NCBI RefSeq assembly: GCF_006345805.1
Contig: NC_042997.1
Coordinates: 149,358,001-149,422,000 of the forward strand
From: Octopus sinensis
Lineage: Eukaryota
Length of the DNA stretch: 64,000 bases
Reading direction: 5' to 3'
The position numbers and the translations under genes were made by a program. Positions 2,401 to 61,254 of this stretch are shown piece by piece. Every line of letters begins with the position of its first letter. Position 1 is the stretch's first letter. The notes beneath the pieces are model-generated. The model had not been told where the DNA came from. It saw only the letters and a list, made by a program, of their open reading frames with translations, and made no database searches.

Positions 2401-3439
2401 TTTGTATGTCAGCGTGCGGTGTGTGATGTGTGTATGTGTGTGTGTGTGGGGGGGGGGCTGAGTATTTGTAAGGGGACAATTAATTTTTGTGCAGGAGTTT
2501 GTGTTTGGGATGGAGGTATTTCCGCCTTATAGGGTTCTGCGTGTGTATACATGGGTGCATTTGTGTGCGCTTTATTCAAACTATTTTTGGGGGACCGAGG
2601 GCATTGGTGGAAGGTCGTTGGCGGAGGGTCGAGTCAGGGGACCTGTGGTTGCAGTCATGGTGGGGCGTACAGATACGATAGGATGTACTTCCTTTCATGC
2701 GAGCAAAGATTAAATACCTCACTCCTGCAATTCAGTTAGACATCCAGGATAACTACATGCATACATACTACATATATACATACATACATACACACACACA
2801 TACATACATACATACATACATACATACATACATACATACATACATACATACTTAATACATGCATGCATGTACATATATATGCATATATGTATGTATACAT
2901 GTATGTATATATGTTTTTTAAGTGATTTGAATTCTTCCTCAGAAGAGCTAGCTGGTTTCTAACAAAGATACAAAGCTCAATCTTTGGAATGTAGATGACG
3001 AAAACAATGTCACATTTTACCGTTCCGCATATATATAGTATTTGTAATGTACGAATCAGTTGGTTGACGTCTTTATCCCAAAATTTAAGGTCATCTAGAC
3101 TGGCAGATATTTACTTATAAAACCAAATGCTTCAAATATTATTGGTATAAATGTAAATCTGTGAATTGGATATAGCATACTTATCTCGTTTCTCTTTGAT
3201 TTTCAAAGAGATATTCATATCTGCAGGACAGCTGACCACTCTCACGGTTCATGCTTTACCAACAATATCCGGCATGATAAGCTTAAACTTAATAGACGTT
3301 TTAAAAGGAAAATTCCACCAGTATTCATTGTCCACTTATTCAATAACTGGGGTATTCTCTACAATTATTCCAGGACAGTCTTTGTTTCCGAATGGTATTG
3401 TATATTGTTTTTGCGACAACGTGATATAGCATACGATGG

Positions 3440-4170: not shown

Positions 4171-5329
4171 AAGTTAATCCAAACATGAAAGCACAAAAAA
4201 ACACAACGCGAGGACGTGGTGCAAATATATATACATATATATATATACACACAGACACACTTTCTGACAATTTGCCTTGTATCCATGACCTTATTATCAC
4301 TGATCACGCTCGCGTGGCATTCATTGCCTGCCTACAGGTATATGTTGTCTATGTGCACCTATTTTGTTAATCCTCTGTTTCTCTTGTTTGTTTTATCTTA
4401 CCCTCCCTCAATACAATATAAAACGAGAATCAGTCAATCGATTTTATATCAGGTATTATCATACAGAATATTTATTATTTAAGACATACAAATTATCAAT
4501 GTATGAAGAAATTAAACGATCTCGCTAAAACACACGAATTTGCTTTTCGATAGAAACAAGTGTTACAAAACATACTAAATACATAAATATATTCATTCGA
4601 TTTTTCTCTTAAAAAACGTAGCGGTACAGATATGTGTGTGTAATGAAGATATCTTTTTATGGCAACAGACCTCACTAGCGGTATTTTGTAATTAGCGTGA
4701 ACTTCTGTGGGCATTTATATTTGGTATGAAACCTGTGAAAGTTTCACAAACCGAGACTCTTGCACACATATGCACGTACATACTGATATATGCAAAGGCG
4801 CGTACAGACTTGCAGAGAATCATATTTAGCAGGTACACGGGAAGAAGCACTAAAAGAAAGTTGATGGAAAACGCGGATGGGTGAAAAAAAGCGGAAAACG
4901 AAAGTAAGAAAATTAGACTTAAGTCTCCTTTGACCATAGAAACCATAAATATACTAGTTGAGTTAGAATAATTCAACGGAGACCGATCTGAAGTTTGCGA
5001 GACAACTGCTCACTCCAAAGAGGCTAGGGCCATCCAGTTCATGTAAAAAACATTTATCCATATGCTTGGATTTGCTGAATATTTCGGATCAGGAATTAAG
5101 TAGTGCAGCAAAATTCTTGGATCTAAAGAGAATATGTAATCTTTCAGTCAAGCATAAGTTGCGTTTATTGCATCCATTTAAATATGGTGAGGATTTCCCT
5201 ACGATCTCCACTTGATTGTATGTGGTGTACTGCTAGGCTTCAACTTAGTGGAATTAATTTTGTCGGTGATCCGGTAAGAAGTTTAGTGGTTTCCATAACG
5301 TGCAAACCACACCTTTTGCATTCACCTTC

Positions 5330-5570
5330 GCATTAACCAATGTAATAAGCTTAACTCAAAAGGAAAATTACATCGGTTTATGTGAACGTGATTTTCGTCT
5401 AATGACAAGCACGCATAAATATGGAATGTATGTAAAGAAACAAGGTCCATACAAAAATTTAAGAAAAGATTATTCTTTGTAACACAAATATAAACGAAGA
5501 ATCCTAATCCATGAAGTATTCTTAGCCTTGTATAATATTTATCACTTACTAATGGATGCCATTTTGAAAA
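5330..5570 (+). pseudogene. Penelope-like GIY-YIG endonuclease fragment (decayed)
   Basis: ENYIGLCERDFRLMTSTHKY followed by KNPNP*SILS, resembling YIGxTExxFKxR...H...i.WxIL of C-terminal PLE endonucleases. Confidence 0.5.
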
Positions 5571-16239: not shown

Positions 16240-16851
16240 TGTATGTATGTGCCTGTACATGTGCATTTATATGTGCGTGTGTAAACATGTTTAAAGGAGT
16301 TTATTAATCGTGAGAGGGGAAAGGAGAGATTATCTTCATTGTAAACAAAAACATAAGGATATAATTCAAATTTACAAGAAGCAGGAGCGGAAATATTTAC
16401 AAATAAATAAAGGAAATAAAATACAATATAGAGAAAGAAAGCAAGGAAGATAATGTGCAGAATTCACAACCGTTTTTTCGAAATAAAACCCAGCTAAATC
16501 AATTTGCTTGCTAAAATAAACCAGATAATTGTATTTATTGTTTTCAGTAATTTTGATTCTTAATTTAATTTTTTTATCGACTCTTGAAAACTTTATTTTC
16601 ATATTTTTTCAAATAGTATTTCTTTTTGTCTCATTGATTTTTTGGAATTTAGATTTGCTGAATTCTTTCATTCCATGTTCACATTAAATTTTGTTTGTAG
16701 GGCATTGTTTTACTGATACATTTAAATTGACTGAAAGTAAAATGTTTATCGGTCGTACGACGAAGACAAAATGCATGCTTATCGGTCATACGTTACAAGA
16801 AAGAAACGCTTGTCATTAATATTGCTTAATCCCACTCTAGTCCAATATCAT

Positions 16852-17003
16852 CATCATCATCATCTTTTTCTCCTCCTCCTCCTCCTCCTCCTCCCCCTCC
16901 TTCCTCTTCTTCTTTTTCTTCTTCTTCTTCTTCTTCTTCTTTTTCTTCTCCTCCGCATCCTCCTTATTCTTCTCCTTCTTCCTCTGCTTCTTCTTCCTCG
17001 TCT

Positions 17004-17035
<32 letters not shown>

Positions 17036-17180
17036 TTCCTTTTCTTCTTCTTCTTCTTCTTTCTATTGTTGTTGTTGTTCTTCTTCTTTCTATTGTTGTT
17101 GTTGTTGTTTTTCTTCTTTCTCTTGTTGTTGTTGTTGTTGTTCTTCTTCTTCTTCTTCTTCTTCTTCTTGTAGTTGTTAT
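16852..17180. repeat. Compound trinucleotide microsatellite (CAT/CTC/CTT/GTT)
   Basis: Direct inspection; source of the spurious poly-L ORF 16771-17304. Confidence 0.97.
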
Positions 17181-17349
17181 TATTCTTACAAAGAGTGTGT
17201 TACTTCATCTTCCTTTTTATAAGCCGGGCTATTTGGGTTATTGGTTGAATATCAAGTGCCTCATGTATAGTGGGTATGTTGTGTGTGATAACGGTTTTAT
17301 CTGAGTTGTTCTATTCAATCGTGAGTTACTCGGTTGAATTGTTACTGTA

Positions 17350-17403
<54 letters not shown>

Positions 17404-17404
<1 letters not shown>

Positions 17405-17923
17405 GAGTGAGAGAGCAGTACATGCCATAAAAGTGACACGGGTAAAAAATATACGAAACCCAGTATACACGTCATTACTACAAGTCTGATAAGGGTACAC
17501 CAAGCATATGCATCACAACCATATGAGCACGATGCGGTGATCTCATATCAAGATAATCATCACACGACCTTGCAGGTGGGGCCCAGTTAGAATTTTCTTC
17601 ATGAGGAGTAGCCCAAACCGGTCAAAAGGCCCCTGAATAAATATTGTTTAAGGATACTGAATAAAACACTCATGTTTCCAATGGTGAATTATCTAAACCC
17701 CAAAGAATTCCTTTCAACACATGGCTATGATGTCCCTCGACTACTTCAGTTCGTGGTCAGAGATACACATATTGTTAGCCACTAAGGGAAATGCTCATCC
17801 GGTTACGGTCAAACGACTGACAAGCAAATCTGTGGTATTGAGCAGAATATTTGCTGTAGTCCATCTGTTATACCAAGGCAAAGCAATGTACATTACATTT
17901 CCAATCAGTTATGATTAGAAGCC
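17404..17923 (-). mobile_element. Unnamed ~520 bp element C, copy 1, with (AAT)n at its inferred 3' end
   Basis: Colinear with 18807-19324 over its whole length (roughly 80% identity by eye); abuts (ATT)n at 17347-17404. Strand is inferred from the tail and from the truncation of copy 3. Confidence 0.85.
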
Positions 17924-17980
17924 ATGATAGCCACTGCCCGTTACTGCATTGGGGCATTTCTTCTTCTTCTTCTTCTTCTT

Positions 17981-18011
<31 letters not shown>

Positions 18012-18074
18012 TTATTATTATTATTATTATATTATTATTATTATTATTATTATTTTATTATTATTATTATGTTT

Positions 18075-18596
18075 ATTATTGTTCCTTCGTAACACAGTGT
18101 AGGGAAAAACGCACCGGAGTATCTTGACATCTGTCAAGTCACAACAAGGACCTCAGACAGCTAATACTTTCCTTAAGATGTGCTGTGTACCCAATAAGGC
18201 TGCTTTTTGCAAGACGTCAATCTTGCATGGGATTTCCAGGTGTCTTAAGAAATCTTGAAGTTTCAATGGGATTGAGCCAACGCTCCAGTAACCACTGGTA
18301 TCATTTTGACATTACCTTCTCGCATTCCATAGAGTCTTACCATTTCCACTTTTAGTTCGAAGTACCTGGTAGTTTTTTCAACCTCTTTACTCACAGCATT
18401 CATGTCATTTGGTATGGCTACATCAATTATCTGACAGTATTTGTCTCACTTATTCAATATGACAATATCAGGCCGACGGTGTGCGATTACACGATCCTTC
18501 TGGAAATCATAGTCCCAGAGTATCCTTACTTTTCCATCTTCCTGCATAACTTTAGTTGGTACATGCTCATACAAGTTCCCTGTTACGTCATATTGT
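18075..18596 (-). mobile_element. Dong/R4-clade RLE non-LTR retrotransposon, 3' fragment
   Basis: YEHVPTKVMQEDGKVRILWDYDFQKDRVIAHRRPDIVI...IIDVAIP...KEVEK...IPVVTGALG...LQKAALLGTQHILRKVLAV* (stop 18153-18155); short 3' UTR, then (TAA)n. Confidence 0.92.
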
Positions 18597-18711
18597 TATT
18601 TATTGCATAAGAGCCAACGAAGATGCACACACACTTCATCGTGGCGGCGTTTGTATTTTTTTTATGCAAGGCTCTCACATCCAGCGGGTCACAATTTCCA
18701 CAATCATCATT

Positions 18712-18777
<66 letters not shown>

Positions 18778-18806
18778 GTCCTCATCATCATCATAATCAT
18801 CATCAT

Positions 18807-19323
18807 TGGGTGAGAGAGCAGTGCATGCCATCAAAGTGAGGTAAAGTATACGAAGCCCAGTATACCCATCATGACTACCCGTCTGATAAGGGTTCAACAG
18901 GCACATGCATCACAACCATATGTGCGCGTCAAGGTGATCTCATATCAAGATAAACAACGCACGACTTTGCAGGTGGGGCCCAGTTAGAATTTTCTTCTGG
19001 TTGAGTAGCCCATCCCGCTCAAAAGGTCCCTGAATACGTATTGTGTAAGGATGTTGAACGAACAACCCATGTTTCCAATGGTGAATTATCCAAACCTCTA
19101 AGAATTCCTTTCAACACATGGCTATGATGCTCCCCCACTACTTCTGCTTGTCATCAGAGATACACATATCGTCAGCCACCAAGGGACATGCTCAACTGGT
19201 TAAGGTCAAACAACTGATAATCAAATCTGTGGTATTAAGCAGAATATTTGCCAAGACAAAACCAATTATACCAAGACAAAACAATGTACATGATAACACT
19301 TCCAGTCAGTTAAGATCAGAAGC

Positions 19324-19324
<1 letters not shown>
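18807..19324 (-). mobile_element. Unnamed ~520 bp element C, copy 2
   Basis: Full-length homologue of 17404-17923, embedded between (ATC)n 18703-18805 and (ATT)n 19325-19452. Confidence 0.85.
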
Positions 19325-19369
<45 letters not shown>

Positions 19370-19388
19370 GTTATTATTATTATTATTA

Positions 19389-19453
<65 letters not shown>

Positions 19454-20682
19454 GCTACAGATTGTTTGTCACACTTTATTCTTTGTTTCAGCATTCAGTC
19501 CTGCCAAAAGATCCTTTTCTTTTCCTGTAATGGATTTATAAATGCAAAATATTTCAGATGATAGTTCGATGATAACAAATATTTTTTGTAATTTAAAAAT
19601 ATATTAAAAACGGATCATTTGATAGGATAAACATTATAATGCTTCATTACTTAAACGTGCATCGTTTCGTAGGCAGAATTAGTTCATGTGAATTTGAAAG
19701 GAACTTTATTCTTTTAACCATATGTTCCGTTAATTAAAGACTTAGAGACGATGTTAAACTAAATTAATAAATAATAGAATCTGATATATCTCCTAACGCA
19801 ACTACTTGAAGGTGCCGCGTAAGATTTAATTTATTTTGGTTACAAATACTGAAAGCAAATTCTTCTAATCCTTTTCTTAATTGATATTTGAACTGTCTAC
19901 AGTTTGATATGTAAAGCCACATAAATACTTAATCCTAAAACCCATAATGATTTTTTCCCCTTTTATGCAGTCAGAAATTAGTATTGACAAATTAATATAT
20001 GGGATATTTAATATTATTGTTTGCATTGCGCGACGGTTTGTGTTGCTATAATCTATTTCGCAAACCTTACACTGCCTAGCAACTAAATTAAGTATTCTCT
20101 ACATTCCAGAAATAACGGAGTGTCAGGGTTTATATTAAAATAAAGATTAGATTCGGTAAACTCATTATCCACAATGCAATAGTTAAGTCTCCATCAACGT
20201 ATACTTTTAGAAAATCCAGCAGAATTCAATCAAAATATGGCACATAAATTAAAAATCGATAACAAATACTTGAAATAGTATTTTAATACGTTGAACAAAA
20301 GTGGAAAAATATACATGTATACGCAGTTTCAAATATAATTCAATACTTATCTAATTAAAAATTTGGCGTTCTTGCCTTCATTCAAATCTTAAGATTTGAA
20401 AATAAAAATGTCATAGATAGTAGAAAACTACATATTGATACCTCGTTATATTTAACAGAGGTATGAAATTTGGATTCCTTAATGTTACATGATCAATAAA
20501 CTGACCATAGGACTGCACCAACAAAGTTCCCCTCCGAGACACGAAATAGGGCAAGGTTGTTTGTAGAAGGCCAGCAGTCGCTCATGGACACCAGTGTTTC
20601 CTCTCCACAGCACCGATGTTGTCCAAGGAAGGCAAGGACCGTTATAGCATGTCGCTAGTGATGTTGCAATACTTTTGTACAG

Positions 20683-40767: not shown

Positions 40768-41544
40768 TGTTAATTATTGTGAAAATAATCATTAACGTGA
40801 TTGTTGTAATATGATAATATAATCCTGGAATATTTTACGAACAAAAGTTACAAAAAAACGTAGTCGATTCCCTTACTAATATATTTCTTGTTTCAAAATG
40901 TGCAAGTGCCTTGTTTTTAACCAATGAAATACTGACTAATGTTAAAAATGTAATTTTGTAAAGGAAACCACGTAATGCTCCCCGGACGATAAGTATTTTG
41001 TTAATATGTGGTGAAAGTGAGACAAATATTTTATCGTATATGTCAGCCATTGCAATTCATCATTTCGGCTAGCTAGCCTTTCCTTTCATTGAAATCGTAT
41101 ATTATCATCTTTTAACATTAATTACGACAAACGGAATGTCTCAAGTGAGACAAATAACGAAAGTGGAAACTCGTTAGGCTTGAATTCTGTTTTCCTTATC
41201 TCACGCTACTCTGTTACTGACATATTTAGGGTTCACATTCTTTCAAATACAAGTACCGAAAGGAAAGGTTTTATTTTGTCAGTCAGCAACCTACTTTCGT
41301 CATACGAGACGATAAAGGAAGAAAATACAACACACATACTTATTTATTCCTCGCAGGATATGGAGCTGGTGGCATTTCTACACGTATTTATTGATTTTAT
41401 TTTATTTAGCATTTACTCGAAAGGGAAACAATTATGCCAAAAAAAATGCTTTTCTCGTGCATTCAAACGATATAGTGACACCCATTACAAGTAGCTATAT
41501 ATCGAATGATCTCGCTGTTATTATTATCTGTTTCTTTATTACCC

Positions 41545-41680
41545 ACAAGGGGCTAAACATAGAGGGGACAAACAAGGACAGACAGACGGATTAAGTCAAT
41601 TACATTGACCCCAGTGCGTAACTGGTACTTAATTTAACGACCCCGAAAGGATGAAAGGCAAAGTCGACCTCGGCGGAATT
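41545..41680 (-). mobile_element. SINE family B, 3' half
   Basis: ccacaaggggctaaac...gaccccagtgcgtaactggtacttaatttaacgaccccgaaaggatgaaaggcaaagtcgacctcggcggaatt. Confidence 0.9.
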
Positions 41681-41689
41681 GATTTCGTT

Positions 41690-42580
41690 ATAATTATTAT
41701 CATTGCCATTGCACAGCTTCTAACGTTGGAGATGTACTACAGTGTCAGCTGTTCACTACATGTGAACTAAGGTAACACTTCTTATATTCAAGCATCTTCC
41801 GGAGTATTCGAGCAGTACCAAGCAGTGCTGTTTACTGCAAGTGCTATAACTATGCTCAAGCATAGTTTGCTTTCTTTCTCAATTAAGATTATGTCTGGCT
41901 TCCTATTCTACATCTCCTGGCTGGTCGTACTGAGTCATAAAATCCCATAGGCTCTTTGCATTATCATTTTCGACGATACCTTCAGGTTTATGGTCGTACT
42001 AAATTTTTTCTTGTCAAGTCTATACTTATTGCAAAGAGTCCAATGGACAAGCCTGGCTATATTGTCGTGACGTGTCATATATTCCTTCTGGGCTAATGGA
42101 GTACATTGACTGGTAATATGCCATACGGTTTCACCACTTTGTCCACAAATTCTGCACTTTTCTGATATGTTATCAACTCTGTATTTTATGCAATTTGTTC
42201 TTAGTAATTGTCTTGGGCACCACAGATTTGAGCCTCCGTTTCTGGTTTTAAATCACTTTTAGTCATCCACAGCCATCTTTTTATCTTCAGCATCCCTCTG
42301 AAATTGTCCATGCATTCTTTTCTTTATCCAACTATTTTCAGTTTCATTCGTTTTTAATTGCTTCTGCAGTGATTTAAGTTTCCAGACTTGCATCCTACAC
42401 AAGCCTGACCTTCCTACTTCTAATAATAGCGGTTCTGTTGCCCTTTTACATAGCATGTTATTTTGTTTTGTTCTGCTCTAATGCTGTGTTCGCATCCAAT
42501 AAGTCCTCTTCCCCAACTTTTTCTTGGTACATACAATCTGTATGAATCTCTTAGCCTACCAGATATAATGCTGTTACCAT
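41690..42580 (-). mobile_element. Dong/R4-clade RLE LINE, 3' fragment (second subfamily), internally deleted
   Basis: RLYVPRKSWGRGLIG...WIKKRMHGQF...KPETEAQICGAQ...CRICGQSGETVWHITSQC...RHDNIARLVHW...LWDF...KPDIILI...ALLGTARILRKML. Confidence 0.92.
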
Positions 42581-42736: not shown

Positions 42737-42838
42737 CCTTTTCTTCTTTTTCTTCTTCTTCTTCTTCTTCTTCTTCTTCTTCTTCTTCTTCTTCTTCTTC
42801 TTCTTCTTCTTCTTTTTCTTCTTCTTTTTCTTCTTCTT

Positions 42839-42900
<62 letters not shown>

Positions 42901-43115
42901 CATCATCATCATAATCATCCTCAGTGATATCACTGATATTGTTTTTATGTGTAGTCGCAGCAGTGATTGCAGCAACAGCAGCAGCAGCGTGGGTGTGGGT
43001 AGTGGTAAGTGTGGCAATGTTGGTAGTGGCGGTGGTAGTGGTGGCAGTGATAGTGGTAAAATAACACCACTACCACCCTTACCATTATCATTATCATTGT
43101 TGTTATTTTTATTAA

Positions 43116-43175
<60 letters not shown>
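42737..43175. repeat. Compound (TTC)n(TTA)n(ATC)n ... (TTA)n microsatellites
   Basis: Direct inspection. Confidence 0.95.
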
Positions 43176-44407: not shown

Positions 44408-44460
44408 TAATAATAATAATCATAATAATAATAATAATAATTATAATAATAATAATAATG

Positions 44461-44505
<45 letters not shown>

Positions 44506-44598
44506 GCCTACCAATATACACTATGAGTTTCTTTGCCCTAGGAGTCGGGAAGACACTCGGCAAGAAATGGAAGAAAATTTGAAAGAAGAAAAAAAAAA

Positions 44599-44667
<69 letters not shown>

Positions 44668-44730
44668 TATTATTATTATTATTATGACAACAACAACAAC
44701 AACAACAATAATAATAATAGTAATAATAAT
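44408..44730. repeat. (AAT)n tracts including an (AAT)n(ATT)n fold-back at 44600-44685
   Basis: Direct inspection; the polarity switch is centred on aat|att at 44642/44643. Confidence 0.95.
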
Positions 44731-45625
44731 GAACCACTGCATGTACAGTACATACTTCGAAACCGAAATGCTGATGTAGACCAAGCAATAACCCATTAGT
44801 GGCTGAGAAGCTCAGGACTGAAAGCGGAGATTGATGGTTTCATATTAACGGCACAAGATCAAAACTTCCTTACTAAAAACTACCAGGATAAGGCTCTTCA
44901 AAACTGTTTTGATCCTAAATACAGATTCTGTGGCAAACTTTGTGAAACAATAGACCATCACGTCTCGAGATGTTTTCTGCTGACACCAAATGAATATAAA
45001 AATCGCCACGGTAGATTAGGGTAGTATTATCATTGCAAGATATGTAAACACTACAAAATCAGGACTCCATCTTGAGCCTGTCGTTGAATGTAAAAGTGTC
45101 ACTATCCTCTGGGATTTTCCAGGTGACATCGACAGAACGATCCACGCTAATCGACCAGATATAGTCATTAAAGACTAGAAGAAAAAGATGTAATAGACTA
45201 ATACATGTAAGTGTTCCCGCTGATAAATATATATCTGTAAAAGAAGTTGAGAGATATAGTAAATATAAGGACCTGGAAATTGAAATAGAAAACATGTGGA
45301 ATCTTAAAGCGAGAAGTGTTCCTATCATTATAGGTTCACTAGGTATGAAAAAGAGATGCCAGAAACACCGAGATGATGTCCCAGGAGAACCATGTCTCGC
45401 AGAAATCCAAAAGATTGTGCTGACAATTACTGCCCACATCCTTAGGGAGCCCTATAAATGTCTGTGTTGTATACATGAAGATATTTCGCTACTGCCCCTG
45501 CCACTTCCCCTCCCCATACTTTCAGTCATACTGTAACATCTCTTATCCTTCACTAGCCCTAAGATGCTAGGTGTGCTTCGGCAAGTTATCGTAACAAACG
45601 AGCAGATTAAAAGTAAATAACCACA
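44731..45625 (+). mobile_element. Dong/R4-clade RLE LINE, 3' fragment (third subfamily)
   Basis: WLRSSGLKAEIDGFILTAQDQ...YRFCGKLCETIDHHVSRC...YKNRH...LWDF...TIHANRPDIVIKD...KYKDLEIEIENMWNLKARSVPIIIGSLG...EIQKIVLTITAHILR. Confidence 0.93.
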
Positions 45626-45654
45626 AAACAACAACTGAAAAACCCAACAACTAT

Positions 45655-45890
45655 AATATTTAGGGACATTTTGAGCGGGACACGTTACTGGATCTGAAGA
45701 AAATTCTAACTTGGCCCCACCTACTGGGTTATGCGCTGTTTATCTTGATATGATGTTACCATGTCGCACACATATTGTTGTGATGCAGGTGCCTGGTGCA
45801 CCTTTATCAGACGGGTAGTCATGATAGGTATACTGGGCTTCGTATATTTAACCCCAGTTTCACATTATGACATGCACTGGTCTCCCACAC
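45655..45890 (+). mobile_element. Element C copy 3, truncated, with (CTA)n(AAT)n tail
   Basis: Reverse complement of the first ~240 bp of 18807-19324 (aaaattctaact.ggccccacct...tatcagacgggtagtcatga..ggtatactgggcttcgtata); tail 45891-45998. Confidence 0.88.
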
Positions 45891-45895
45891 ACTAC

Positions 45896-45985
<90 letters not shown>

Positions 45986-46931
45986 TAATAATAATAATAC
46001 ATAATCGACTGACCCAGAAATTTACAATTTAAATATTTACAGGGTTTTATGAAGCAAGTGTAATATATAACGGTGTATATATATCAAAGTTAAGTATCTA
46101 CATGATTTGATCAATTCATTCCACGTATCCTTGGTTTATTGTTTTTATCACATCTAATAAAATGGAGAACGTTTCGTGAAGAGCTGATTGGCTTTGATGT
46201 TTAAGCTTTGCCTAGATTCTGTCGATGATTGGCACATAAAATTTCACAGTTTCTGTTTAAAATATGCACTTGTATTCTTTTATTTTCATTGTGTTGGAAA
46301 GGTGGATACATTTCCTTTCCGATCCGTATTTCATATAAAAGTTTCTAGTGCATTTTCTACAGGTTGTTCAAAAATTTCTCCGCAGTGAATTTTCAAGAGC
46401 TTTTCGATGAACGGATTATTTCCAGGGAACTTCGGCTACCAAGATCATCTGATTTAACATCGACAGATATTTTTCTGGCGTACAAATAAAGGATGAGTGT
46501 CCAAGAATCGCCAGAGAAAACTTAATGAGCTAAAAAACATATTTATAACCTCCAGACGGTTCTTACCGCGTCAGATTCTCCAAGGTATATTTCAAAACAT
46601 GTATTGAAAATGAAACACGACACTTTTAACACTTCTTATAAAGCTGATTTAAAGTCTTGTAAAGTCTAATATATTCTTTGGTAGTCTTATACCATCTTAT
46701 AAATATGTATTTTGCAATAAAATACTCACTGCGGCGAGATGTTTTGAACACGCTAAATAAGAAATGTGCATCAGAATCCTATAACTCATGTAGAGGACTA
46801 TGTATTTCTTTTCTATCAGCGGTATTTCTCATTCCCATATTGTCCATCTCCATTAGCTGCTGACATCCAAAATGTTCAATAGAAATGCATTTTTGAATTA
46901 GGCCAAAAATGGATAACAATTTCGCTATAAT

Positions 46932-50020: not shown

Positions 50021-50449
50021 GGTCTGGTGAGTTTCAAAGGGTAGGACTTGAGCATGCATTTCCACGCGGGATAAAGAAATCAGAGTGATAGCGATTTAAA
50101 TGCTTAGTATATAGCAGCCTAATTGAGCCCTATACGTAAGGTTTCCATAAAATTATCCGAGATGGACTACACCTTTTGGACATTCTGTGGGATTTTATGC
50201 TCTTATGTTTTCTGTTGGATTTATTCATTTATTTAATCATATTGATTTCCTTCTACTCGAGAGAAACCGTCCATTTTTTTGGATTGTATATTTTATGTTG
50301 CATTTCTTGTGTTGCATTTCTGTGTTGCATTTCGTCCTGAGAAGTATCCTGAATGATTTGGGCATTTTTGGTGAATGTAAGAAATAACACATCCAGTAAC
50401 AATTATAATCATAATTATTAACTCTATAGTTTTAATTTTTTATTATAAT

Positions 50450-50557
50450 TATAGTATAGTATATTCTTCTCCTTTTCTTTTTTCTTCTTCTTAATAGTAG
50501 TAGTAGAAGAAGAAAAAAGAAGCAGAAGAAGACGAAGAAGTAAAAAAAGAAAAGAGA

Positions 50558-50592
<35 letters not shown>

Positions 50593-50685
50593 ATAGTAGT
50601 AGAAGAAGAAGAAGAAGAGGAAGAAGAAGAAGAAATAGACGAAGAAGACGAAGAAGTAAATAAAGAAAAAAAGTAGTAGTAGTTA

Positions 50686-50718
<33 letters not shown>

Positions 50719-50868
50719 AAGAAGAAGAAGACAAAGAAGAAAAAGACGAAGAAGACGAAGAAGACGAAGAAATAAAAAAAGAAAACAAAAAGTAGTAGTA
50801 ATTATAGTAGTAGTAGTAGTAGTAGTAGTAGTATAGTAGTAGTAATAGTAGTAGTAGTAGTAATAGTA

Positions 50869-50938
<70 letters not shown>

Positions 50939-51005
50939 ATAGAAGAAGAAGAAGAAGAAGAAGAAGAAGAAGAAGAAGAAGAAGAAGAAGAAGAACCAGC
51001 AGTAG
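50450..51005. repeat. Compound (TAG)n/(GAA)n microsatellite, ~550 bp
   Basis: Direct inspection. Confidence 0.97.
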
Positions 51006-51630
51006 CAGCTACTGAAATTGTCCATGCTGTTTTCCTGTTACTATATTAATTACAGCTAGTAAAAGGTGTGAGATATTATCATACAAATCAACACAAACGT
51101 AGATCATTTCCCACCAGATAATGCCTCTTTTATCTGAATCGCCCCAAGGCACCTTTATCGTAATCAAAGTCATTCATTTATTCACCATAATGACCACCGC
51201 ATTTTACTGAAATTTAACTAACAAGTTCCATGTCATTTACTATTTAGTAAGTAAGCCGAGCATTCTCTATGATATTATGTCATATCATCATCTTACTGCA
51301 TAAGAGAATTTAACTGAGACAAGGACCGATGAAGGCACTTCACATTGGATTATTGTAATGTCACTCAGATATCAAAGAAGACAATGCGTAATATGTAAAG
51401 AATGGCTTCAAGAGATACGTGTCTTTCGGTTTTCTTCAGCATCTGGCAGGTATAAATGTCGAAGGAGTACAGGAGAAAGAGAAGAATAATTTTCTTTTTT
51501 TTTTGTTAATATGGAAGATTTCTATGATTATTGGCATTTCCTCACAGCATATAATTCTTTCTTGACATCACGTTTCATTTTATTTTTATTTTCAATTTTC
51601 TTGTGTACAGCCTTACTCGCTATCACCTCT

Positions 51631-51667
<37 letters not shown>

Positions 51668-53434
51668 GTATATATATATATATACATATATATTTATATA
51701 TATAAATAATCATATATCGACCTTATGCACATACGTAGAAACACATACACACATACGTGTGTATCTACACAAATACACACACACATGCACGCACTTACAC
51801 ACGCGCGCGAGCATAAACACACACTCACACACAGACATAGACACATACGAGAATGTGCATGCAAACACAAGCATCTATACATAGTTCATACGCACAAATG
51901 TAACTGATTCTCTGCAGGCGTATTATGTCACCAAGTTCTCGATTCCTGATTGCATATTATTATAACACGAACAATGCATGAATGTTCCTATATTCCCACC
52001 AAGCTGAACCAAATCCATATAGCTAAATCTTGGGTGAATAATCCCGATAACATCAGCTGTTGTAAGCTACAATTTTTATCGAATATCGCAAGCACGCATA
52101 CACACGCGCGCGCACAAACCCACGTATGTATGTATATTAATATGTATTCATATAGATTCATACATATGTGTGTTTTTGTACATTCACACTTCGATACATG
52201 CAAAAACATTAATTATAAGATATCAGCTAAAGATTTATGTATAGTTTATACATTTGCAAATTTGCTTGTGGCTTTACGTATCGGACAGATCTCACGTCAT
52301 CCGTTTTAAGACGCATCTATGCCCCGCAGTGCGGTCGTGCTAAGATTTACAAAACGTACGTTTGCTGATTTTATGTATCATTTATTTACTGGATATGCTA
52401 TTATTATAAATACTTCGTAAATCGAATGATAATCATCTTTGTGTTACTCCTTAACCACTGAGGAACTAGGAGATATGCAACCTTCCCCCACTATCCTATA
52501 TGAAAGAAGATTCGTTTTAAAAGGTTTGATATAGGAGAGATCTATAGCTTCATGTGAAGCAAAGGAACATGGTGTTTATTCAATAGAATTAGCAATGATT
52601 TTCTAAATCACACAAATAGTCTAAATTATTGCCACCCATATGAATTTTTCAGTCAGTAGTTCCTATTTTTCAACTCATTTCTGCTATTACCAATAGTTAT
52701 TTACACGTACGGCTACATTTTGTCGCTTATTCGAAATTTGCTCTGCAATTATAATTGTTAAATTTAGGACTTACACATATTTACTAAACACGCACATGCA
52801 CACACATAAACGCACACACATACATATACACACAAACGCACACACATACTGCATGTACTTACATATATACACACATATACATGCATTTCTGTATATATAC
52901 TCATAGGATTAGACGTATTGCAGAAGCTAAATTATCTGTATATTGTTCACTTTAAACCAATTTAAAAAGTTTTTATTTCCTTTAGATGTCAGATAAAATC
53001 CTTCTATAAGAATTGAAAAGATATGCAGTTATGTTTGTGGCAATGTTTACGGAAGACTGCGATTTGTAAATTGCCAACTTTGTAAGTACTGCAACACTTA
53101 CAATAACTTGTAAGCGTTGCAAGTTATTTTGCAAGCAAATTTCAGAAGGAATTAGAAACCTTTACTGAGGTCGTTTCAACGTTGCTGAAGAGTAAAAGGC
53201 ACATATTCTAAACTTTCGGATACTATAAGGATGCTGAAATTTTCCCAACGTATTCAAGATATTATCGATGCTGATGGTGTATCTGTGTTGTAAGTGAGGG
53301 TGTGTTGTATGCGTATTTCTGTCTTTGTTTTGAATCTCTGTCTATGTCAACTTTGAAAGGTTTACAAAAGTATGAAAAAACATGTCCTTTATAGCTTAAC
53401 GGGTTACTTCATGTCTTTAATATTCAGGCCAACT

Positions 53435-53590
53435 AAGGCAGTGAGCTGGCAGAATAGTTAGCACATCGGGCAAAATGACTTGCGGCATTTCAGCCATCTT
53501 TACGTTCAGAGTGCAATTCCCACCGTGACAGACTTAGCCCCTCCCCCGAAATTGCTGTCCTTGTGCCAAGAATTAAAAATAATATTCAAG
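53435..53590 (+). mobile_element. SINE family B, internally deleted
   Basis: ggcagtgagctggcagaatagttagcacatcgggcaaaatg...tttacgttcagagt...ccttgtgccaagaatt. Confidence 0.8.
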
Positions 53591-56500
53591 CAAAGTGTGG
53601 AGAATGAAACAAGAAAACATTATTCCGCAATGTCAAGGCACAAAGTAAAAAAAAAGAAAAAGAAAGGCTAAAGTAAATAGTATAAGTGATAGGTAAAAAA
53701 ATATACATGAAGGTAATTCTATAGTATTAGTAAGATGTATTGAATTCCCACTCTCATATCTAAGTTAGTCGAATATTTAGAATTCAGTATACTACATCTT
53801 TTTTTTTTTTAACTTTCAACTGATTTTCAGTTATATACTTAAAATTTTATCCGGTGTCGGAGGTAAATAACCTGGGCTAACATTAAAACAATATTTTTCA
53901 CTTCCGTAAGTTTCAAATATCTACCTGAAGAAAGAGAGAAACTCCGCAAAATTAAAATACACAGAGGACTAACCAAAGATAACTGAATGCAATCTCCAGA
54001 GAACTGGAAATGCCATTCTTATGTCACTAAAACTGCAATCTACAATTCTACAAGAAAGTACATTTAATAATGCAGTCCTAGTGACACACTTTTTGAAGGG
54101 TTTGGCATAATCGGAATGGATATAATCGTGCTGGATACAACTTCCAGCACAGGTTCTATTTCAGCAGGTTGACCTGGATGTATACAACAACAGATATGGT
54201 TAAACATTCATAATACACAGATCTCTTCATTCTTTCTTATCTGCTAGTTTCCTTTACTGTTTCGATGATGATTCCATTGTAATTGCGTATTTCCTTTATA
54301 TTTTGATTTTCTTTGATAGATCCTCTTATAATTGTTGTTTTTGTTGTGTTTGCTTTTATTGCAGTGTAATTATATTTTTGTTGTTCGTAATATTTAAATA
54401 AAACACTCCATCATTATTGTTTTCACCATGATTTACTTTCTCTGTATTGTTGATTAATATAATATACTATATTAAATATTGATATGATTTTATTATATAC
54501 TTCATTTCCGTATTTTTCCTGTTCACTCGTTTTTCCTTTCATTTTCTGCCCCACCCACATACCCACATCTTCCTGTTTATTCTAGGCTGTTCTTATCACT
54601 ACCACCCTAATTACCATATATATAATTAGAGATGACCAATAACCGAGTCTAGGGCATTTTTTCCGGTTGATTGATAATAATTATCCTTTCTTCTATTCAA
54701 AATCATACATATTTCTTTGCAGCTGCGTTCATTGATATTGTTGTTGTTTCTTAATCATATATTTAATCATGGTGTTGTCATTTTGTCATTTATTTTGATT
54801 ATAGTTGTTGTTGGCAGAGTAGTTAATGATAATACTGGTGGTGAAGCTTGTGCTGCTGCTGCTGTCTTTGCGGGTGTTTTCATTATGTGTTTATATGAAA
54901 TATCTTAGTAATTACATTGGTGAGTAATTTCGTTCTATACATTTCATTGATTTGCCTGTATGCAACACTACCGACAATACAAGTTGGAAAAGCAATTCGA
55001 TCTTGCGTAGACAATATTTGAAGTAAGCTATGTACTGTTTTTTCTATATAGCTTTTGTATTAATAATAACGTTATATTTTTTTTATTCACTTATATATTC
55101 ATTTATTCATTGTTATATTTTTTAATTAATTAATCATCTTCGAAGTGTCTCACTGATTTTTTTATTTCTTTTGTTTCTTTTCAATATTTTCCTTCATGCG
55201 TTCAGCTGTTTGCGGAGAAAGGAGAGCGCGGTGAGGGAAGAAGGTTATAACACAGCAACACACTCACACACTTCCACCTGCGCTCATACGGAAATGCACA
55301 CCAGTATATACACAAGTGAACGTAACCCAGAATGGAGGTACATTCATGAATTTGTCGATGCGAACCAACGTGCCAGTATGGAAGCATACATAGACACACA
55401 CACACACACGAGCACACATACACACACAAACAAACACACACACATTTATATGTATACGTGTGTGTCTGTGTATGAATGTGTGTTGTTCCTGCCATTTTCT
55501 TTGTAAATCTATATGCTTATATTTGTGTATGTGTGTTTGTCCAAATGCACATTGTATAATTTTGCGTGTGCATGTGTCAGTGCATTTGTGTCTACGCATG
55601 CGTATCTTTTGCTAACGATTACTTATATATATATATATATATTTCACTTGAAATATTATACTGGGTAATCTGATTGCGTGACATCAAACCTCAATATTTA
55701 TGTTCGTGAAGTGGACATAGACTACTATAACTCAATAAATATATTCAACTGAAAGTGCGTATGTTTTAACTGTAAACTAGATTATCCATTTTGTTGCCCT
55801 AATATTGTCATCACTGATTACTTGTCTGTATAGCACAGACCATTTTACACGTAAAAATATGTATATTTCTCTACATGCTAAAAAGACAAACAAATGCATG
55901 CACATAATCATGTGTATATTTGTGTGAATGTGTGGGTATTTAATACAAAATAAAGACAATATTTTTGTTATATATGTTGCAAACAGCAGACGTGAATATA
56001 CATAAGTATAGAATAATTTCAAAGATGTGACGATAAATATTCAAATATCGCTGACCAAATTCATTTTCCTGTTAGATGGAGAAAAAGTGTAAAAATGTCA
56101 GGGCAGGAAAAGGAGGCGGAGAAAGATATTGGAAGTTAAAATGTTTCTAGACCAGAATATTTTTCTATACCACACAAGAAATATTACTGTGGGTTGAGTA
56201 TTGTATATTGTTCTCGTAAAGGAAATTTTTTCGTTTAAAGAATTGGGATATCGTAGGGACATGGAAGGGCGTGGCAGCAAATAATTTTGTTTTAACCCTT
56301 GATGCTCACATAAGCATATATTTAACCTAAAAAAATATGACTTTCGAAGACAATTACTAGATTGTGTTGCAATGCAAAAATGGTATGTATTATCTCCTGG
56401 GGATTAAAGTTTCTTCTATACATAATCAATGCCGGTCATGTGACGGGGGCCTTGTGCTTAAGACAAGGTAGCTTGAATTATACAAACACACACTTATATG

Positions 56501-57443
56501 CAAACATTAACTAATTACAATATCCGAGAAATCGCCGAGGGGCTGTGAATATGTCAATTAATTTATGTGGCCATTAATGTGCGTGTGTGTATAAACTTGC
56601 CCACAAGTATGGGCAAGCAAATAACGTCTGTATATATATACGCACAAATATATATAGTCTATGCGAATGTTTGCTTTCTTACAGATTTTGTGCGTGTCTG
56701 TGTGTATTCATCATGTACATGTCATTGTTTTCGTGTGTTCCATCTAGACGCCACAGAATCCGATTTCCTGGAATGATTACGAATGTCCCCCCCTATACTA
56801 CTCAAATCGTTTGCACAGCTCAGTGTATCTCTTATAATACACACGAAACACAATCTTTAAGTTGGATACAAGCGGCGTAAATTTATCTTTGGTTCACCAT
56901 AGATGATCGTTCCCATGATTTTAGACTAATTTACGTACCCGTCACACAGTAAACCTTTACGAAAGAGTATGGATTTTTTGCTGCCACATAGAAACTGCTA
57001 TACTTGGTTAATGATTTTACTCAAATATCGCAAGTGTTAATTATTCATGTCTGTGTGAATACATTCTCATTCTAGTATACCCAATAAGTGGCTATGTGGA
57101 CTAAGCCATCCTGTTTGTAGCATTGGAATTGGTGTTAACTGCAATATCATATCTTAATGGGATAGAAGTAGCATGTGGTTAGGAGTGATATCTTCCAAAC
57201 TGTTTTAGCTCAACCGATACTCTGTATCACAATGCGGTGGCTTGCAGATATCCTTAACTCGCTTGTTGTTTAGGCGTTTATTTCGTATTCAGGACAACAC
57301 AAATCGATCCTTCTATGTGAGAGTCTGTTGTAATGCATCTCCAGATGAGGCGACTATTAGTGTCAGTATCACTAGTATTCTCTAGATTGTGAGATAGGTT
57401 ATGTATGTACATATATGTAAATATAGCTATGAATATATATATA

Positions 57444-57474
<31 letters not shown>

Positions 57475-58647
57475 CATGAGCATATATAATGATACTTCTA
57501 GTGTATGTACACTCACGCCTATTAATTATACCCGCTTGCTAACAGTAGGTGTGTTCTATTTGGTCCATGTTCTTTTGGAGAAATATGAAACAGTGTTTTC
57601 TCGGATCCAAGTTTTTCTGGAACAGTAGATTTTAAGAGCATGTCAGAAAATGGTGTCGATTCTGTTTTCAACTCGTTCAGATGAGTTATATTCGATGATA
57701 GTAAGAAGTCTTCATTACAATACAGACTGATAATCACAGTTCAGAATCAAATGGATACATTCGTATCCTGTTTCTGAAGCTGAATACATAAAATGTGTTT
57801 GCAAAACCGCCCCGGATTCTAACAGTGTGTGTTGCCTAACTCCGTTTTAGAAATATTAAACAGCATAGAAACGGAGTATTCTTTGCCTCCATAAAACAAA
57901 GTAAAGCGAAAATATTTAAAAATTAGCACCGGTTTGTTATTAAGGATAAATCACACTAATGAATATACAAATTACAAACGATTACTATTTTATATGAAAT
58001 ACGTTTGCACATCAAATCTGTTCAAAATCTGAAGGGGACATAATGACAATTAGATACAAAATATTCTGCAGAATAAAAATTAGCGCTACATTATGTTATG
58101 GTGTTCTATCTTCTTCGCCGTGTGAAGTATCGCAAACACAGCTCTAGAGCAAATTATTCTTTTTGTACATAAACAGAGGTACATTCACTGAAAGACATAG
58201 ATACACTCATACAGACATGAACAATGTATAAACATAGACAAAAAACCCACGTCATTTTATGAAAAATGGTTGTCATTATTATATTCATTTTCCATATTGT
58301 GTCTAACAAGGACACAAAAAGAATTCCTCGAAGCCACTGTTGATAATAATCACCAGATATGTTCAGTGATCCATCACTTCTACGTCAGGCAGATATTTGT
58401 ATCTAATTGTTACTATCTCTTTCCTCATTGTTGCTCGGTAATTTCGTATATTACTATAAATTTGTTACTAGTGGAAAATGGCGTGTTATTAGCCGTATAT
58501 CCAGTATACAGTATCATTCTTGTTTCTAACTACGTACATCCACTTCAAATTGCCCTGTATGCATTAATATATATCTCAACGTATATATATATATATACAT
58601 AAATGCATATATATATAAACATATATGTACATACATACATATATATA

Positions 58648-58723
<76 letters not shown>

Positions 58724-60129: not shown

Positions 60130-60345
60130 AAAGCATTTGGCCCTCTGACAAAATTCGTAGAGGAAATTCTTTTGAGCTTCGAGCTTCTGCGCTCAAATCC
60201 TGAAAAGAGCAAATTGGCCTTTCATCAGTTCAAGGTTAATAAAATATAATTCAGTCAAGTACCGGAGTCAGTGGAGTCTTCTATGATAATGCGTTATGGT
60301 TAGTCTGCTCCATCACGAGTCATTGAAAAGATAAAAGATGAAAAA
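60130..60345 (+). mobile_element. Old SINE family B-like copy
   Basis: ctcaaatcc...ggcctttcatcagttcaaggttaataaaat...aagtacc...; tail gaaaagataaaagatgaaaa. Confidence 0.5.
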
Positions 60346-60364
60346 GCATTATTATTATTCACAG

Positions 60365-60449
60365 ATTTTGCTGGAACTCCTGGTGTCTTACATGCGTAGC
60401 GGGCTTGCTACCTGCAGCTTACAGTACCGTGCAATCCATTATTTTTCAG
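60365..60449 (+). CDS. Candidate internal exon (85 nt)
   Basis: attattattcacag|...TTTTCAG|gtatct; GC-richer than flanks; two frames open (ILLELLVSYMRSGLATCSLQYRAIHYFS or FCWNSWCLTCVAGLLPAAYSTVQSIIFQ). Confidence 0.35.

Positions 60450-61182: not shown

Positions 61183-61254
<72 letters not shown>

What the first reader, a model, noticed from the sequence alone, without database searches (positions are those of the whole stretch)
17347..19452. Head-to-tail, same-polarity array of TAA-embedded retroelements
Seen: (ATT)n - element C - (TTC/TTA)n - Dong/R4 3' end - (ATC)n - element C - (ATT)n, with all three inserts pointing the same way (AAT-type tails to the left). The second cluster (44408-45998) also has a Dong/R4 fragment and element C co-oriented and ending in (AAT)n. 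Established knowledge: Dong/R4 RLE elements are sequence-specific and Dong targets TAA repeats. Inference: each insertion regenerates a polarised TAA target, producing self-extending insertion trains shared by an autonomous LINE and a non-autonomous passenger.
Basis: partly seen in the sequence, partly recalled or inferred. Interest (0 to 1): 0.72.

Follow-up and report, generated by a model that had tools for sequence, protein, structure and literature searches.

The report
Retroelement pile-ups in octopus TAA microsatellites
In an octopus chromosome, old broken copies of a known TAA-repeat-seeking jumping gene (Dong/R4 LINE) and of a small non-coding element with the same habit have stacked up one after another in the same microsatellites; this is an ordinary result of a known targeting mechanism, and the small element may be a previously undescribed passenger.

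Summary
On the minus strand, 19453→17350 reads (AAT)43 – C2 – (GAT)35 – Dong-like 3' fragment – (TAA)24(GAA)18 – C1 – (AAT)18. All three inserts are co-oriented. A second train lies at 44408–46005 on the plus strand.

The "Dong/R4" pieces encode the CCHC plus restriction-like-endonuclease C-terminus of an RLE LINE. Relatives from many animals end in (TAA)n.

Element C is an ORF-less retroposon of at least 553 bp. Four copies were found, three in the window and one in a 213-kb Octopus vulgaris sample. They share one 3' end, have four different 5' truncation points, sit in TAA-class tracts and lie beside Dong fragments.

The window belongs to the Octopus vulgaris group, where Dong-R4 LINEs are already known to be abundant.

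The likeliest mechanism is serial target-primed insertion into a strand-polar (TAA)n target.

Not shown:
- That C is mobilised by Dong. There is no 3' sequence similarity.
- That trains are "self-extending".
- That co-orientation is absolute. One head-to-head pair exists at a polarity flip.

C's tails are (AAT)n, (GAT)n or (ACT)n(TAA)n, not uniformly AAT.

Verdict: a new member of a known kind, of modest interest.

The parts
19325..19453 (-). (AAT)43, the 5' flank of C2; upstream remnant of the microsatellite target
   Evidence: the sequence beyond 19454 is unique in the sample
18807..19324 (-). Element C copy C2, 518 bp, 5'-truncated at model position 30
   Evidence: closest to the O. vulgaris copy in L085 at 89-91% identity
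18703..18806 (-). (GAT)35, the tail of C2 and 5' flank of the Dong-like fragment
18081..18702 (-). DongA: 5'-truncated Dong/R4-type RLE LINE 3' end. It runs from the CCHC remnant through the RLE domain (RHD...RPDIV...D..P.D.N...KE.EK) with several stops and a frameshift, then an ~90-nt 3' UTR with a hairpin
18009..18080 (-). (TAA)24, the tail of DongA
17958..18010 (-). (GAA)18 block directly abutting the 5' end of C1
   Evidence: one of three (TAA)n(GAA)n compounds; each is followed by a truncated element
17405..17957 (-). Element C copy C1, 553 bp, the longest copy seen
17350..17404 (-). (AAT)18, the tail of C1; unique DNA follows (17170-17349)
44408..44504 (+). (TAA)32, the upstream tract of train 2
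44505..44599 (+). Unassigned 95-nt insert between two (TAA)n tracts. It may be an extremely 5'-truncated retroelement end; not significantly similar to the DongB UTR
44600..44730 (+). Compound tract (TAA)14-(TTA)14-(CAA)7-(TAA)6 with a polarity flip at about 44642
44731..45654 (+). DongB: 5'-truncated Dong/R4-type LINE 3' end (CCHC plus RLE, two frameshifts). Its 3' UTR ends ...CAACAACT|ATAATA, a tail of only two units
   Evidence: 3' UTR compared by eye with L001/L002
45655..45890 (+). Element C copy C3, the 3'-terminal 236 bp only (model positions 311-553)
45891..46005 (+). (TAC/ACT)12 then (TAA)26, the tail of C3
41700..42548 (-). DongD: a third, more divergent RLE LINE fragment with an internal deletion. 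Its short TAA-like tail carries an abundant octopus SINE (41525-41690) flanked by target-site duplications
42741..43175 (-). Compound microsatellite just 5' of DongD. Minus strand: (AAT)30 ... (GAT)8 (TAA)11 (GAA)42

Best explanation
This is a graveyard of independent retrotranspositions into strand-polar (TAA)n-containing compound microsatellites of an Octopus vulgaris-group genome.

Inferred mechanism: Dong/R4-type LINEs encode a reverse transcriptase followed by a CCHC knuckle and a restriction-like endonuclease. The endonuclease nicks the (TTA)n strand. The (UAA)n tail of the RNA pairs with the nick and reverse transcription is target-primed. Copies are therefore usually 5'-truncated, end in a trinucleotide tail, and always take the same orientation relative to the TAA strand.

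Element C is an ORF-less retroposon family of at least 553 bp. It shows the same insertion signature and the same target, so it most likely borrows Dong-type machinery in trans.

Because every insert leaves TAA-class repeat on both sides, later insertions land next to earlier ones and give co-oriented head-to-tail trains.

Shown: the anatomy, the RLE identity, the TAA tails in relatives, the non-random flanks and the recurrence in O. vulgaris.
Inferred: the nick/priming details, the trans-mobilisation of C, and the order of insertions.

These copies are old. C copies differ from one another by 9-25%, and the Dong ORFs are broken.
For: 1. RLE LINE identity. Conceptual translations show CCHC...RHD...RPDIV...D..P.D.N...K..EK..KY...GALG motifs. 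There are 401 and 285 homologues at E<=1e-3. A profile of these homologues hits R2 retrotransposon proteins 9nl3_A and 9dou_A at the CCHC and RLE segments. The full-length relative L001 has RVT_1 upstream and no APE domain.

2. TAA tail and target. L001 and L002 end in (ATA)n. 28 of 36 related loci with a trinucleotide tract after the ORF have the AAT class, and the others ((AAC), (ACT), (AGT)) are mostly followed by (AAT)n. O. vulgaris L087 has a Dong copy with (ATT)n on both sides. Supporting literature: PMC3812793, PMC7998251.

3. Element C. Four copies have one common 3' end (...CTCTCTCAC[T/C]C) and four different 5' ends, at model positions 1, 30, 83 and 311. None has an ORF or protein similarity.

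4. Flanks. TAA-class sequence lies at or near the 5' side of all four C copies. It directly abuts C2 and the L085 copy. For C1 it lies behind a (GAA)18 block. For C3 it is only the two-unit ATAATA tail of DongB.

5. Recurrence. The only C copy in 213 kb of O. vulgaris sits in a TAA tract between Dong fragments.

6. Non-randomness: the permutation.

7. Independent events. C2 is closer to the copy 3.5 Mb away (89-91%) than to its neighbour C1 (83-84%). DongA and DongB share no nucleotide similarity.

8. Trains also occur beside relatives in other animals (L070, L077, L078, L039).

9. Dong-R4 is abundant and recently active in O. vulgaris (PMC13282606).
Against: - C's 3' region shows no similarity to any Dong 3' UTR seen here. 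The classical shared-tail criterion for a SINE/LINE pair is met only by the repeat tail.
- Blocks of (GAT)35, (GAA)18 and (ACT)12 sit where the simple model predicts (TAA)n.
- Polarity flips, (TAA)n to (TTA)n, occur inside trains (window ~44642; L085 16197). One head-to-head pair exists.
- Co-orientation statistics are weak: 6 of 7 pairs, p≈0.06.
- No empty orthologous site or target-site duplication could be examined.
- RT-based clade placement was not possible, because the window fragments lack the RT domain.
Confidence: 0.72

Rival explanations
1. Element C is not a non-autonomous passenger. It is the long non-coding 3' end (3' UTR) of another autonomous Dong/R4-type LINE lineage, and all copies seen are simply short 5'-truncated LINE copies.
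For: - All four copies are 5'-truncated at different points, and the true 5' end is unknown.
- No tRNA, 5S or snRNA head and no Rfam family was found.
- Truncated LINE ends are often mistaken for SINEs (PMC2887409).
- Octopus carries several Dong lineages with unrelated 3' UTRs.
Against: - No coding similarity appears anywhere in 553 bp, although the Dong 3' UTRs seen here are about 90-200 nt.
- All four copies are 553 bp or shorter, whereas the Dong fragments range from ~150 to more than 1300 bp. That clustering would be unlikely (roughly 2%) if C were a multi-kb element.
Confidence: 0.2
2. The trains were made in single events, not serially. An R2-type reverse transcriptase jumped end-to-end from the 5' end of one RNA template to the 3' tail of another (or copied a read-through co-transcript) and integrated a chimeric head-to-tail cDNA.
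For: - R2-family RTs are known to template-jump (established knowledge: Bibillo and Eickbush).
- At the DongB–C3 junction only two tail units (ATAATA) separate the elements.
- Upstream tails abut directly on truncated 5' ends.
- Each of the three (TAA)n(GAA)n compounds is followed immediately by a truncated element, as if the junction were made enzymatically.
- Dong is co-transcribed with upstream TAA repeats and processed by a 5' ribozyme (PMC3774820).
Against: - Partners and order vary: C–Dong, Dong–C and Dong–Dong, with different Dong lineages.
- Long tails of 18-43 units lie between the members.
- Most Dong copies in relatives, and the L087 copy, are solitary.
- Serial insertion explains all the junctions without an extra assumption.
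Confidence: 0.1
3. There is no targeting. Ordinary LINE and SINE insertions happened to fall close together, and their short A-rich tails later expanded into long trinucleotide microsatellites. Alternatively, unequal crossing-over between microsatellites duplicated the elements locally.
For: - The octopus genome is extremely rich in compound trinucleotide microsatellites that are not tied to these elements.
- LINE tails are known to seed microsatellites (PMC3812793, PMC2887409).
- An abundant, unrelated SINE with target-site duplications also sits in DongD's tail.
Against: - Repeat tracts lie on the 5' side of the elements too, which tail expansion cannot explain.
- The permutation test gives p<5e-6.
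- The single C copy and most Dong fragments in an independent 213-kb sample are again in a TAA-tract cluster.
- C1 and C2 are not each other's closest relatives, so they are not local duplicates.
Confidence: 0.05

Closest known systems
Dong (Bombyx mori) and Dong-like R4-clade RLE LINEs (DongAg, DongBg, D. stevensoni Dong1/2; Dong-R4 families annotated in Octopus vulgaris)
   Same: - CCHC plus restriction-like endonuclease C-terminal to the RT, with no APE domain.
- (TAA)n 3' tail and (TAA)n on both flanks.
- 5'-truncated copies.
- Already annotated in molluscs and specifically in O. vulgaris (PMC3812793, PMC7998251, PMC13282606).
   Different: - The window holds only dead 3' fragments of at least three unrelated lineages (DongA, DongB, DongD).
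- Tails and flanks include (GAT), (GAA), (ACT) and (CAA) blocks as well as TAA.
- RT phylogeny against reference Dong/R4 could not be done here.
SINEU / Tx1-Mar in crocodilians (a SINE and a LINE sharing a specific target)
   Same: - A non-autonomous retroposon inferred to use a target-specific LINE because both insert into the same target and lie next to each other, without a clearly shared 3' tail (PMC4494074).
   Different: - The target there is a Mariner transposon and the LINE is an APE-type Tx1.
- SINEU has defined snRNA-derived heads, whereas C's head is unknown.
R2 SIDEs of Drosophila (non-autonomous derivatives of an RLE LINE)
   Same: - Non-autonomous elements that use an RLE LINE's site-specific machinery and insert co-oriented in the same repeated target (author's knowledge: Eickbush and Eickbush 2012).
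   Different: - SIDEs retain the R2 5' ribozyme and 3' UTR sequence. C shows no sequence relation to any Dong UTR seen here and no HDV-like ribozyme hit.
TRAS/SART telomeric-repeat LINEs and microsatellite-specific Waldo, Mino, Kibi and Koshi
   Same: - Insertion into simple tandem repeats in a fixed orientation, which gives co-oriented arrays within the repeat (PMC3812793, PMC2887409).
   Different: - Those are APE-type LINEs with other repeat units.

Membership tests
Dong/R4 clade RLE non-LTR retrotransposon | C-terminal CCHC zinc knuckle followed by a PD-(D/E)XK restriction-like endonuclease, downstream of the RT | tested here: met
   The motifs are present in DongA, DongB and DongD translations. 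A profile of homologues aligns to the R2 protein CCHC and RLE segments. The relative L001 has RVT_1 at aa 513-770 upstream of this domain.
Dong/R4 clade RLE non-LTR retrotransposon | No N-terminal APE endonuclease and no recognisable N-terminal zinc fingers | tested here: inconclusive
   The window copies are 5'-truncated. In relative L001, the 512 aa upstream of the RT have no Pfam hit, but that contig is cut at its 5' end.
Dong/R4 clade RLE non-LTR retrotransposon | 3' end is a (TAA)n tail and the insertion lies within (TAA)n microsatellites | tested here: met
   DongA is followed by (TAA)24 and DongB by ATAATA. The L087 copy has (ATT)n on both sides. 28 of 36 relatives with a trinucleotide tail have the AAT class.
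Dong/R4 clade RLE non-LTR retrotransposon | RT-domain phylogeny places it in the R4 clade rather than R2, NeSL, HERO or CRE | not testable with these tools
   The window fragments contain no RT, and no reference Dong, R4 or HERO sequences were available. HERO families with microsatellite targets exist (PMC4640811), so this remains open. Published annotation calls such octopus elements Dong-R4 (PMC13282606).
SINE (element C) | Short, non-coding, dispersed multicopy retroposon | tested here: met
   Four copies of 553 bp or less lie at three loci in two genome sources. They have no ORF and no protein similarity.
SINE (element C) | 5' head derived from a tRNA, 5S, 7SL or snRNA with an internal pol III promoter | tested here: not met
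   ARAGORN and Rfam find nothing in or near C. The true 5' end may not be represented, so this is a failure to find a head, not proof that none exists.
SINE (element C) | 3' tail sequence shared with the partner LINE | tested here: not met
   nhmmer at E<=10 and local alignment against about 10 Dong 3' UTRs give nothing. Only the trinucleotide repeat tail is shared.
Target-specific non-autonomous retroposon sharing a LINE's target (SINEU/Tx1-Mar type) | Same specific target and same orientation rule as the LINE, with copies adjacent to LINE copies | tested here: met
   All 4 C copies lie in TAA-class tracts, within 130 bp of a Dong fragment, and co-oriented with the local TAA strand. The sample is small.

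The most novel reading that the evidence does not exclude
Element C is an undescribed class of promoter-less retroposon aimed at microsatellites. Dong-type RT would recognise it only through its trinucleotide (UAA-like) tail, with no shared 3' UTR. Trains would be transcribed through one another from upstream, or built in one step by RT template jumping. The recurrent (TAA)n(GAA)n block at 5' junctions and the (TAA)n to (TTA)n flips would be enzymatic scars of that process. On this reading Dong-type elements would be a major engine of the compound trinucleotide microsatellites that fill octopus genomes.
Probability: 0.15. Interest if true: 0.6.

Novelty: new member of a known kind. Interest (0 to 1): 0.3.

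Why it matters
If C is confirmed genome-wide as a TAA-specific passenger, it would be an example of a non-autonomous element exploiting an RLE, microsatellite-targeting LINE without a shared 3' UTR. I found no report of such an element in the literature searched. That bears on how Dong-type reverse transcriptases choose their templates.

It would also help explain two features of octopus genomes. One is the 893 "unclassified SINE" families with recently active insertions reported in O. vulgaris. The other is the unusual load of compound trinucleotide microsatellites.

Practically, these loci will be mis-assembled or mis-annotated by standard pipelines, so knowing the pattern helps repeat curation. 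As it stands, the finding mostly re-illustrates known Dong biology.

Tried and rejected
- Pfam on the window's RLE translations gave no hit. The domain is not modelled there.
- Rfam (E<=1 on 17000-19800, gathering threshold on the whole window) and ARAGORN found no tRNA head, HDV-like ribozyme or other RNA family.
- An exact look-up of ten window ORFs found none in the protein collection.
- Scanning bacterial/archaeal genome contigs and viral contigs for a conserved 26-mer of C gave nothing.
- The idea that DongB plus C3 is one LINE with a C-like 3' UTR was rejected. By eye comparison with relatives L001 and L002, DongB's UTR ends in the usual ...AAC-type terminus plus ATAATA just before C3. 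C3 starts at an arbitrary internal point of C.
- The idea that the 95-nt piece 44505-44599 is a Dong 3' UTR stub was not supported statistically, so it is left unassigned.
- The consensus fold of C's 3' 240 nt has only 2 compensatory pairs in 4 sequences and is not used.
- Local tandem duplication of C was rejected by the identities.
- The DongA-based protein search returned no octopus protein, so Dong-centred O. vulgaris loci could not be fetched. The orthologous O. vulgaris region for the two clusters (about OX597814.1:147.01 and 147.04 Mb by extrapolation) could not be retrieved with the tools.
- Xiong and Eickbush 1993 (PMC309301) is not held.
Full report
**What is there**

Read 5'→3' on the minus strand it is:

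| Segment | Coordinates | Note |
|---|---|---|
| (AAT)43 | 19453-19325 | 5' flank of C2 |
| C2 | 19324-18807 | element C copy |
| (GAT)35 | 18806-18703 | tail of C2 |
| LINE fragment "DongA" | 18702-18081 | coding 3' end |
| (TAA)24 | 18080-18009 | tail of DongA |
| (GAA)18 | 18010-17958 | abuts C1's 5' end |
| C1 | 17957-17405 | element C copy |
| (AAT)18 | 17404-17350 | tail of C1 |

- Both outer flanks (17170-17349 and 19454-19700) are unique in all the sequence I could sample.
- C1 and C2 are 83% identical.

The second cluster, on the plus strand, is:

| Segment | Coordinates | Note |
|---|---|---|
| (TAA)32 | 44408-44504 | upstream tract |
| Unassigned piece | 44505-44599 | 95 nt |
| (TAA)14(TTA)14(CAA)7(TAA)6 | 44600-44730 | polarity flip near 44642 |
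| "DongB" | 44731-~45654 | LINE fragment |
| ATAATA | end of DongB span | two-unit tail |
| C3 | 45655-45890 | 3' 236 nt of C |
| (TAC)12(TAA)26 | 45891-46005 | tail of C3 |

**The LINE pieces**

- DongA and DongB translate, with stops and frameshifts, to a CCHC knuckle followed by RHD…RPDIV…D..P.D.N…K..EK..KY…GALG.
- They have hundreds of metazoan homologues in cnidarians, echinoderms and crustaceans. The best are 60% and 55% identical.
- A profile of these homologues aligns, weakly but at the right places, to the CCHC and restriction-like endonuclease segments of R2 retrotransposon proteins in the PDB (9nl3_A and 9dou_A, E≈3e-3).
- A full-length relative, L001, has RVT_1 upstream and no APE domain.
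- tblastn with the homologues found two further fragments in the window: DongD at 41700-42548(−) and a weak one at 3177-3410(−).
- DongA and DongB share no nucleotide similarity, so several lineages are present.

**TAA tails are the family's hallmark**

- Relatives L001 and L002 end in (ATA)n.
- Of 58 metagenome-derived relatives with a complete C-terminus, 36 have a trinucleotide tract shortly after the ORF.
- 28 of those 36 are AAT-class. The rest ((AAC), (ACT), (AGT)) are mostly followed by (AAT)n.
- Variant trinucleotide blocks are therefore normal for this family, which puts C2's (GAT)35 and C3's (ACT)12 in context.
- The literature states that Dong targets (TAA)n in insects, molluscs and cnidarians (PMC3812793, PMC7998251) and that R4/Dong elements carry an RT plus an REL-endonuclease.

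**The organism**

- A transposon ORF at 62342-62866 hits only Octopus vulgaris proteins.
- Window 52502-64000 is 95-98.6% identical to O. vulgaris chromosome OX597814.1 at about 147.05 Mb.
- In O. vulgaris, Dong-R4 LINEs are already annotated as one of the most recently active LINE groups, with 5 families and 1129 young insertions. SINEs make up 11.6% of that genome and most SINE families with recently active insertions are unclassified (PMC13282606).

**Element C**

- An nhmmer model of C finds only the three window copies and one copy in 213 kb of sampled O. vulgaris DNA, at L085:16577-17047.
- The four copies share one 3' end (…CTCTCTCAC[T/C]C) and start at four different internal points: model positions 1, 30, 83 and 311. 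This is the signature of target-primed reverse transcription with 5' truncation.
- C has no ORF, no similarity to the 246 Dong-like proteins, and no tRNA or Rfam match.
- It has no similarity to any Dong 3' UTR examined.
- Its tails are (AAT)18, AAT(GAT)35, (ACT)12(TAA)26 and (AAT)21(GAA)21.

**Is the association real?**

- All four C copies have TAA-class sequence at or near the 5' side as well: (AAT)43; (TAA)24(GAA)18; the ATAATA tail of DongB; and (ATA)15.
- All four lie within 130 bp of a Dong fragment.
- In the window, five of six elements have a perfect trinucleotide tract within 30 bp of the 5' end. No set of six random placements out of 200,000 reached five.
- All AAT-class tracts of the window fall in the three Dong-bearing loci.
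- In the independent O. vulgaris sample, the only C copy and all but one of the Dong fragments are in one TAA cluster. That cluster reads: three nested minus-sense Dong fragments, a polarity flip, then C(+), (AAT)21(GAA)21 and a plus-sense Dong fragment.
- The remaining Dong copy, in L087, is solitary with (ATT)n on both sides.
- C2 is closer to the O. vulgaris copy 3.5 Mb away (89-91%) than to its neighbour C1 (83-84%). The neighbours are therefore independent insertions, not local duplicates.

**Orientation**

- Six of seven adjacent element pairs are co-oriented.
- The exception, L085 X3(−)/C(+), straddles a switch of repeat polarity.
- Orientation therefore tracks the local TAA strand. That is what a sequence-specific endonuclease predicts, but numerically it is only p≈0.06 against random orientation.
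- Among relatives from other animals most copies are solitary. A minority (L070, L077, L078, L039/L040) have a second same-polarity TAA tract, and in L070 a second RLE fragment, just downstream.

**Mechanism**

- The best reading is serial TPRT by Dong/R4-type machinery into a polar (TAA)n target. C uses the same machinery in trans.
- The inference from shared target to shared machinery has a precedent in SINEU/Tx1-Mar (PMC4494074).

Three things are not shown.
1. The partner LINE of C is unidentified.
2. C may be the long UTR of another LINE lineage. I rate this about 0.2, because all four copies are 553 bp or shorter and non-coding.
3. Single-event chimeras made by RT template jumping or read-through transcripts cannot be excluded (about 0.1).

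"Self-extension" of the target is plausible but untested. By eye, element-linked TAA tracts are not longer than free ones in the sample (tract list).

**Unexplained**

- Only three (TAA)n(GAA)n compounds occur in about 266 kb. Each is followed immediately by a 5'-truncated element: C1, DongD and L085 X4.
- Twice, a tail (TAA)n flips to (TTA)n before the next element (window ~44642; L085 16197).

**Verdict**

The possibly new item is element C as a TAA-specific non-autonomous family. I rate this a new member of a known kind, with interest about 0.3.

Noticed in passing
window 17958-18080; 42741-42900; L085:17048-17175: The only three (TAA)n(GAA)n compound tracts in about 266 kb of octopus sequence are each followed directly by the 5' end of a truncated retroelement (C1, DongD, a Dong fragment). 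Two of the junctions read GAAGAA|AATG. This may be a 5'-junction signature.
   Followed up: partly
window 44600-44685; L085:16141-16275: Inside trains, the (TAA)n tail of an upstream element flips to (TTA)n before the next element. This forms a long perfect inverted microsatellite.
   Followed up: no
window 41525-41690 (-): A ~170-nt SINE (…GGGGTCGTTAAATTAAGTACCAG…) sits in DongD's short tail, flanked by the duplication GATAATAAT(T)ATAAC. It has 49 BLAST hits in the ~266-kb sample, so it is an abundant octopus SINE with ordinary target-site duplications.
   Followed up: partly
window 2925-3410 (-), next to (TACA)n 2754-2914: A weak RLE-type LINE fragment (…PDIV…CPADMNISLKIKEKRDKY…) has a 3' end that runs into an ACAT/TGTA-type tetranucleotide repeat. 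It may be a second microsatellite-associated RLE lineage.
   Followed up: no
window 52502-64000: This stretch is 95-98.6% identical to Octopus vulgaris OX597814.1:147045680-147065973. The window therefore comes from that chromosome region of O. vulgaris or a sister species.
   Followed up: yes
window 61492-62866 (-): Reverse-transcriptase-like ORFs (YVDDINIMV motif) of another retroelement are 68-87% identical to 'hypothetical predicted proteins' of O. vulgaris.
   Followed up: partly
window 50432-51025 and 16847-17169: Very long compound trinucleotide arrays ((AGT), (TAG), (AGA) blocks; (ATC), (CTC), (CTT), (GTT) blocks) have no recognisable element attached. Compound trinucleotide microsatellites are a general feature of this genome.
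   Followed up: no
L070:4780-5560; L078 and L079 about 4745-5400: In metagenome contigs that carry Dong relatives, the same ~110-nt piece (ttcttaggtgata.tacagttcagca…) follows the Dong tail. It is followed in turn by another (AAT)n and a second RLE fragment. This may be an analogous passenger in another animal.
   Followed up: no
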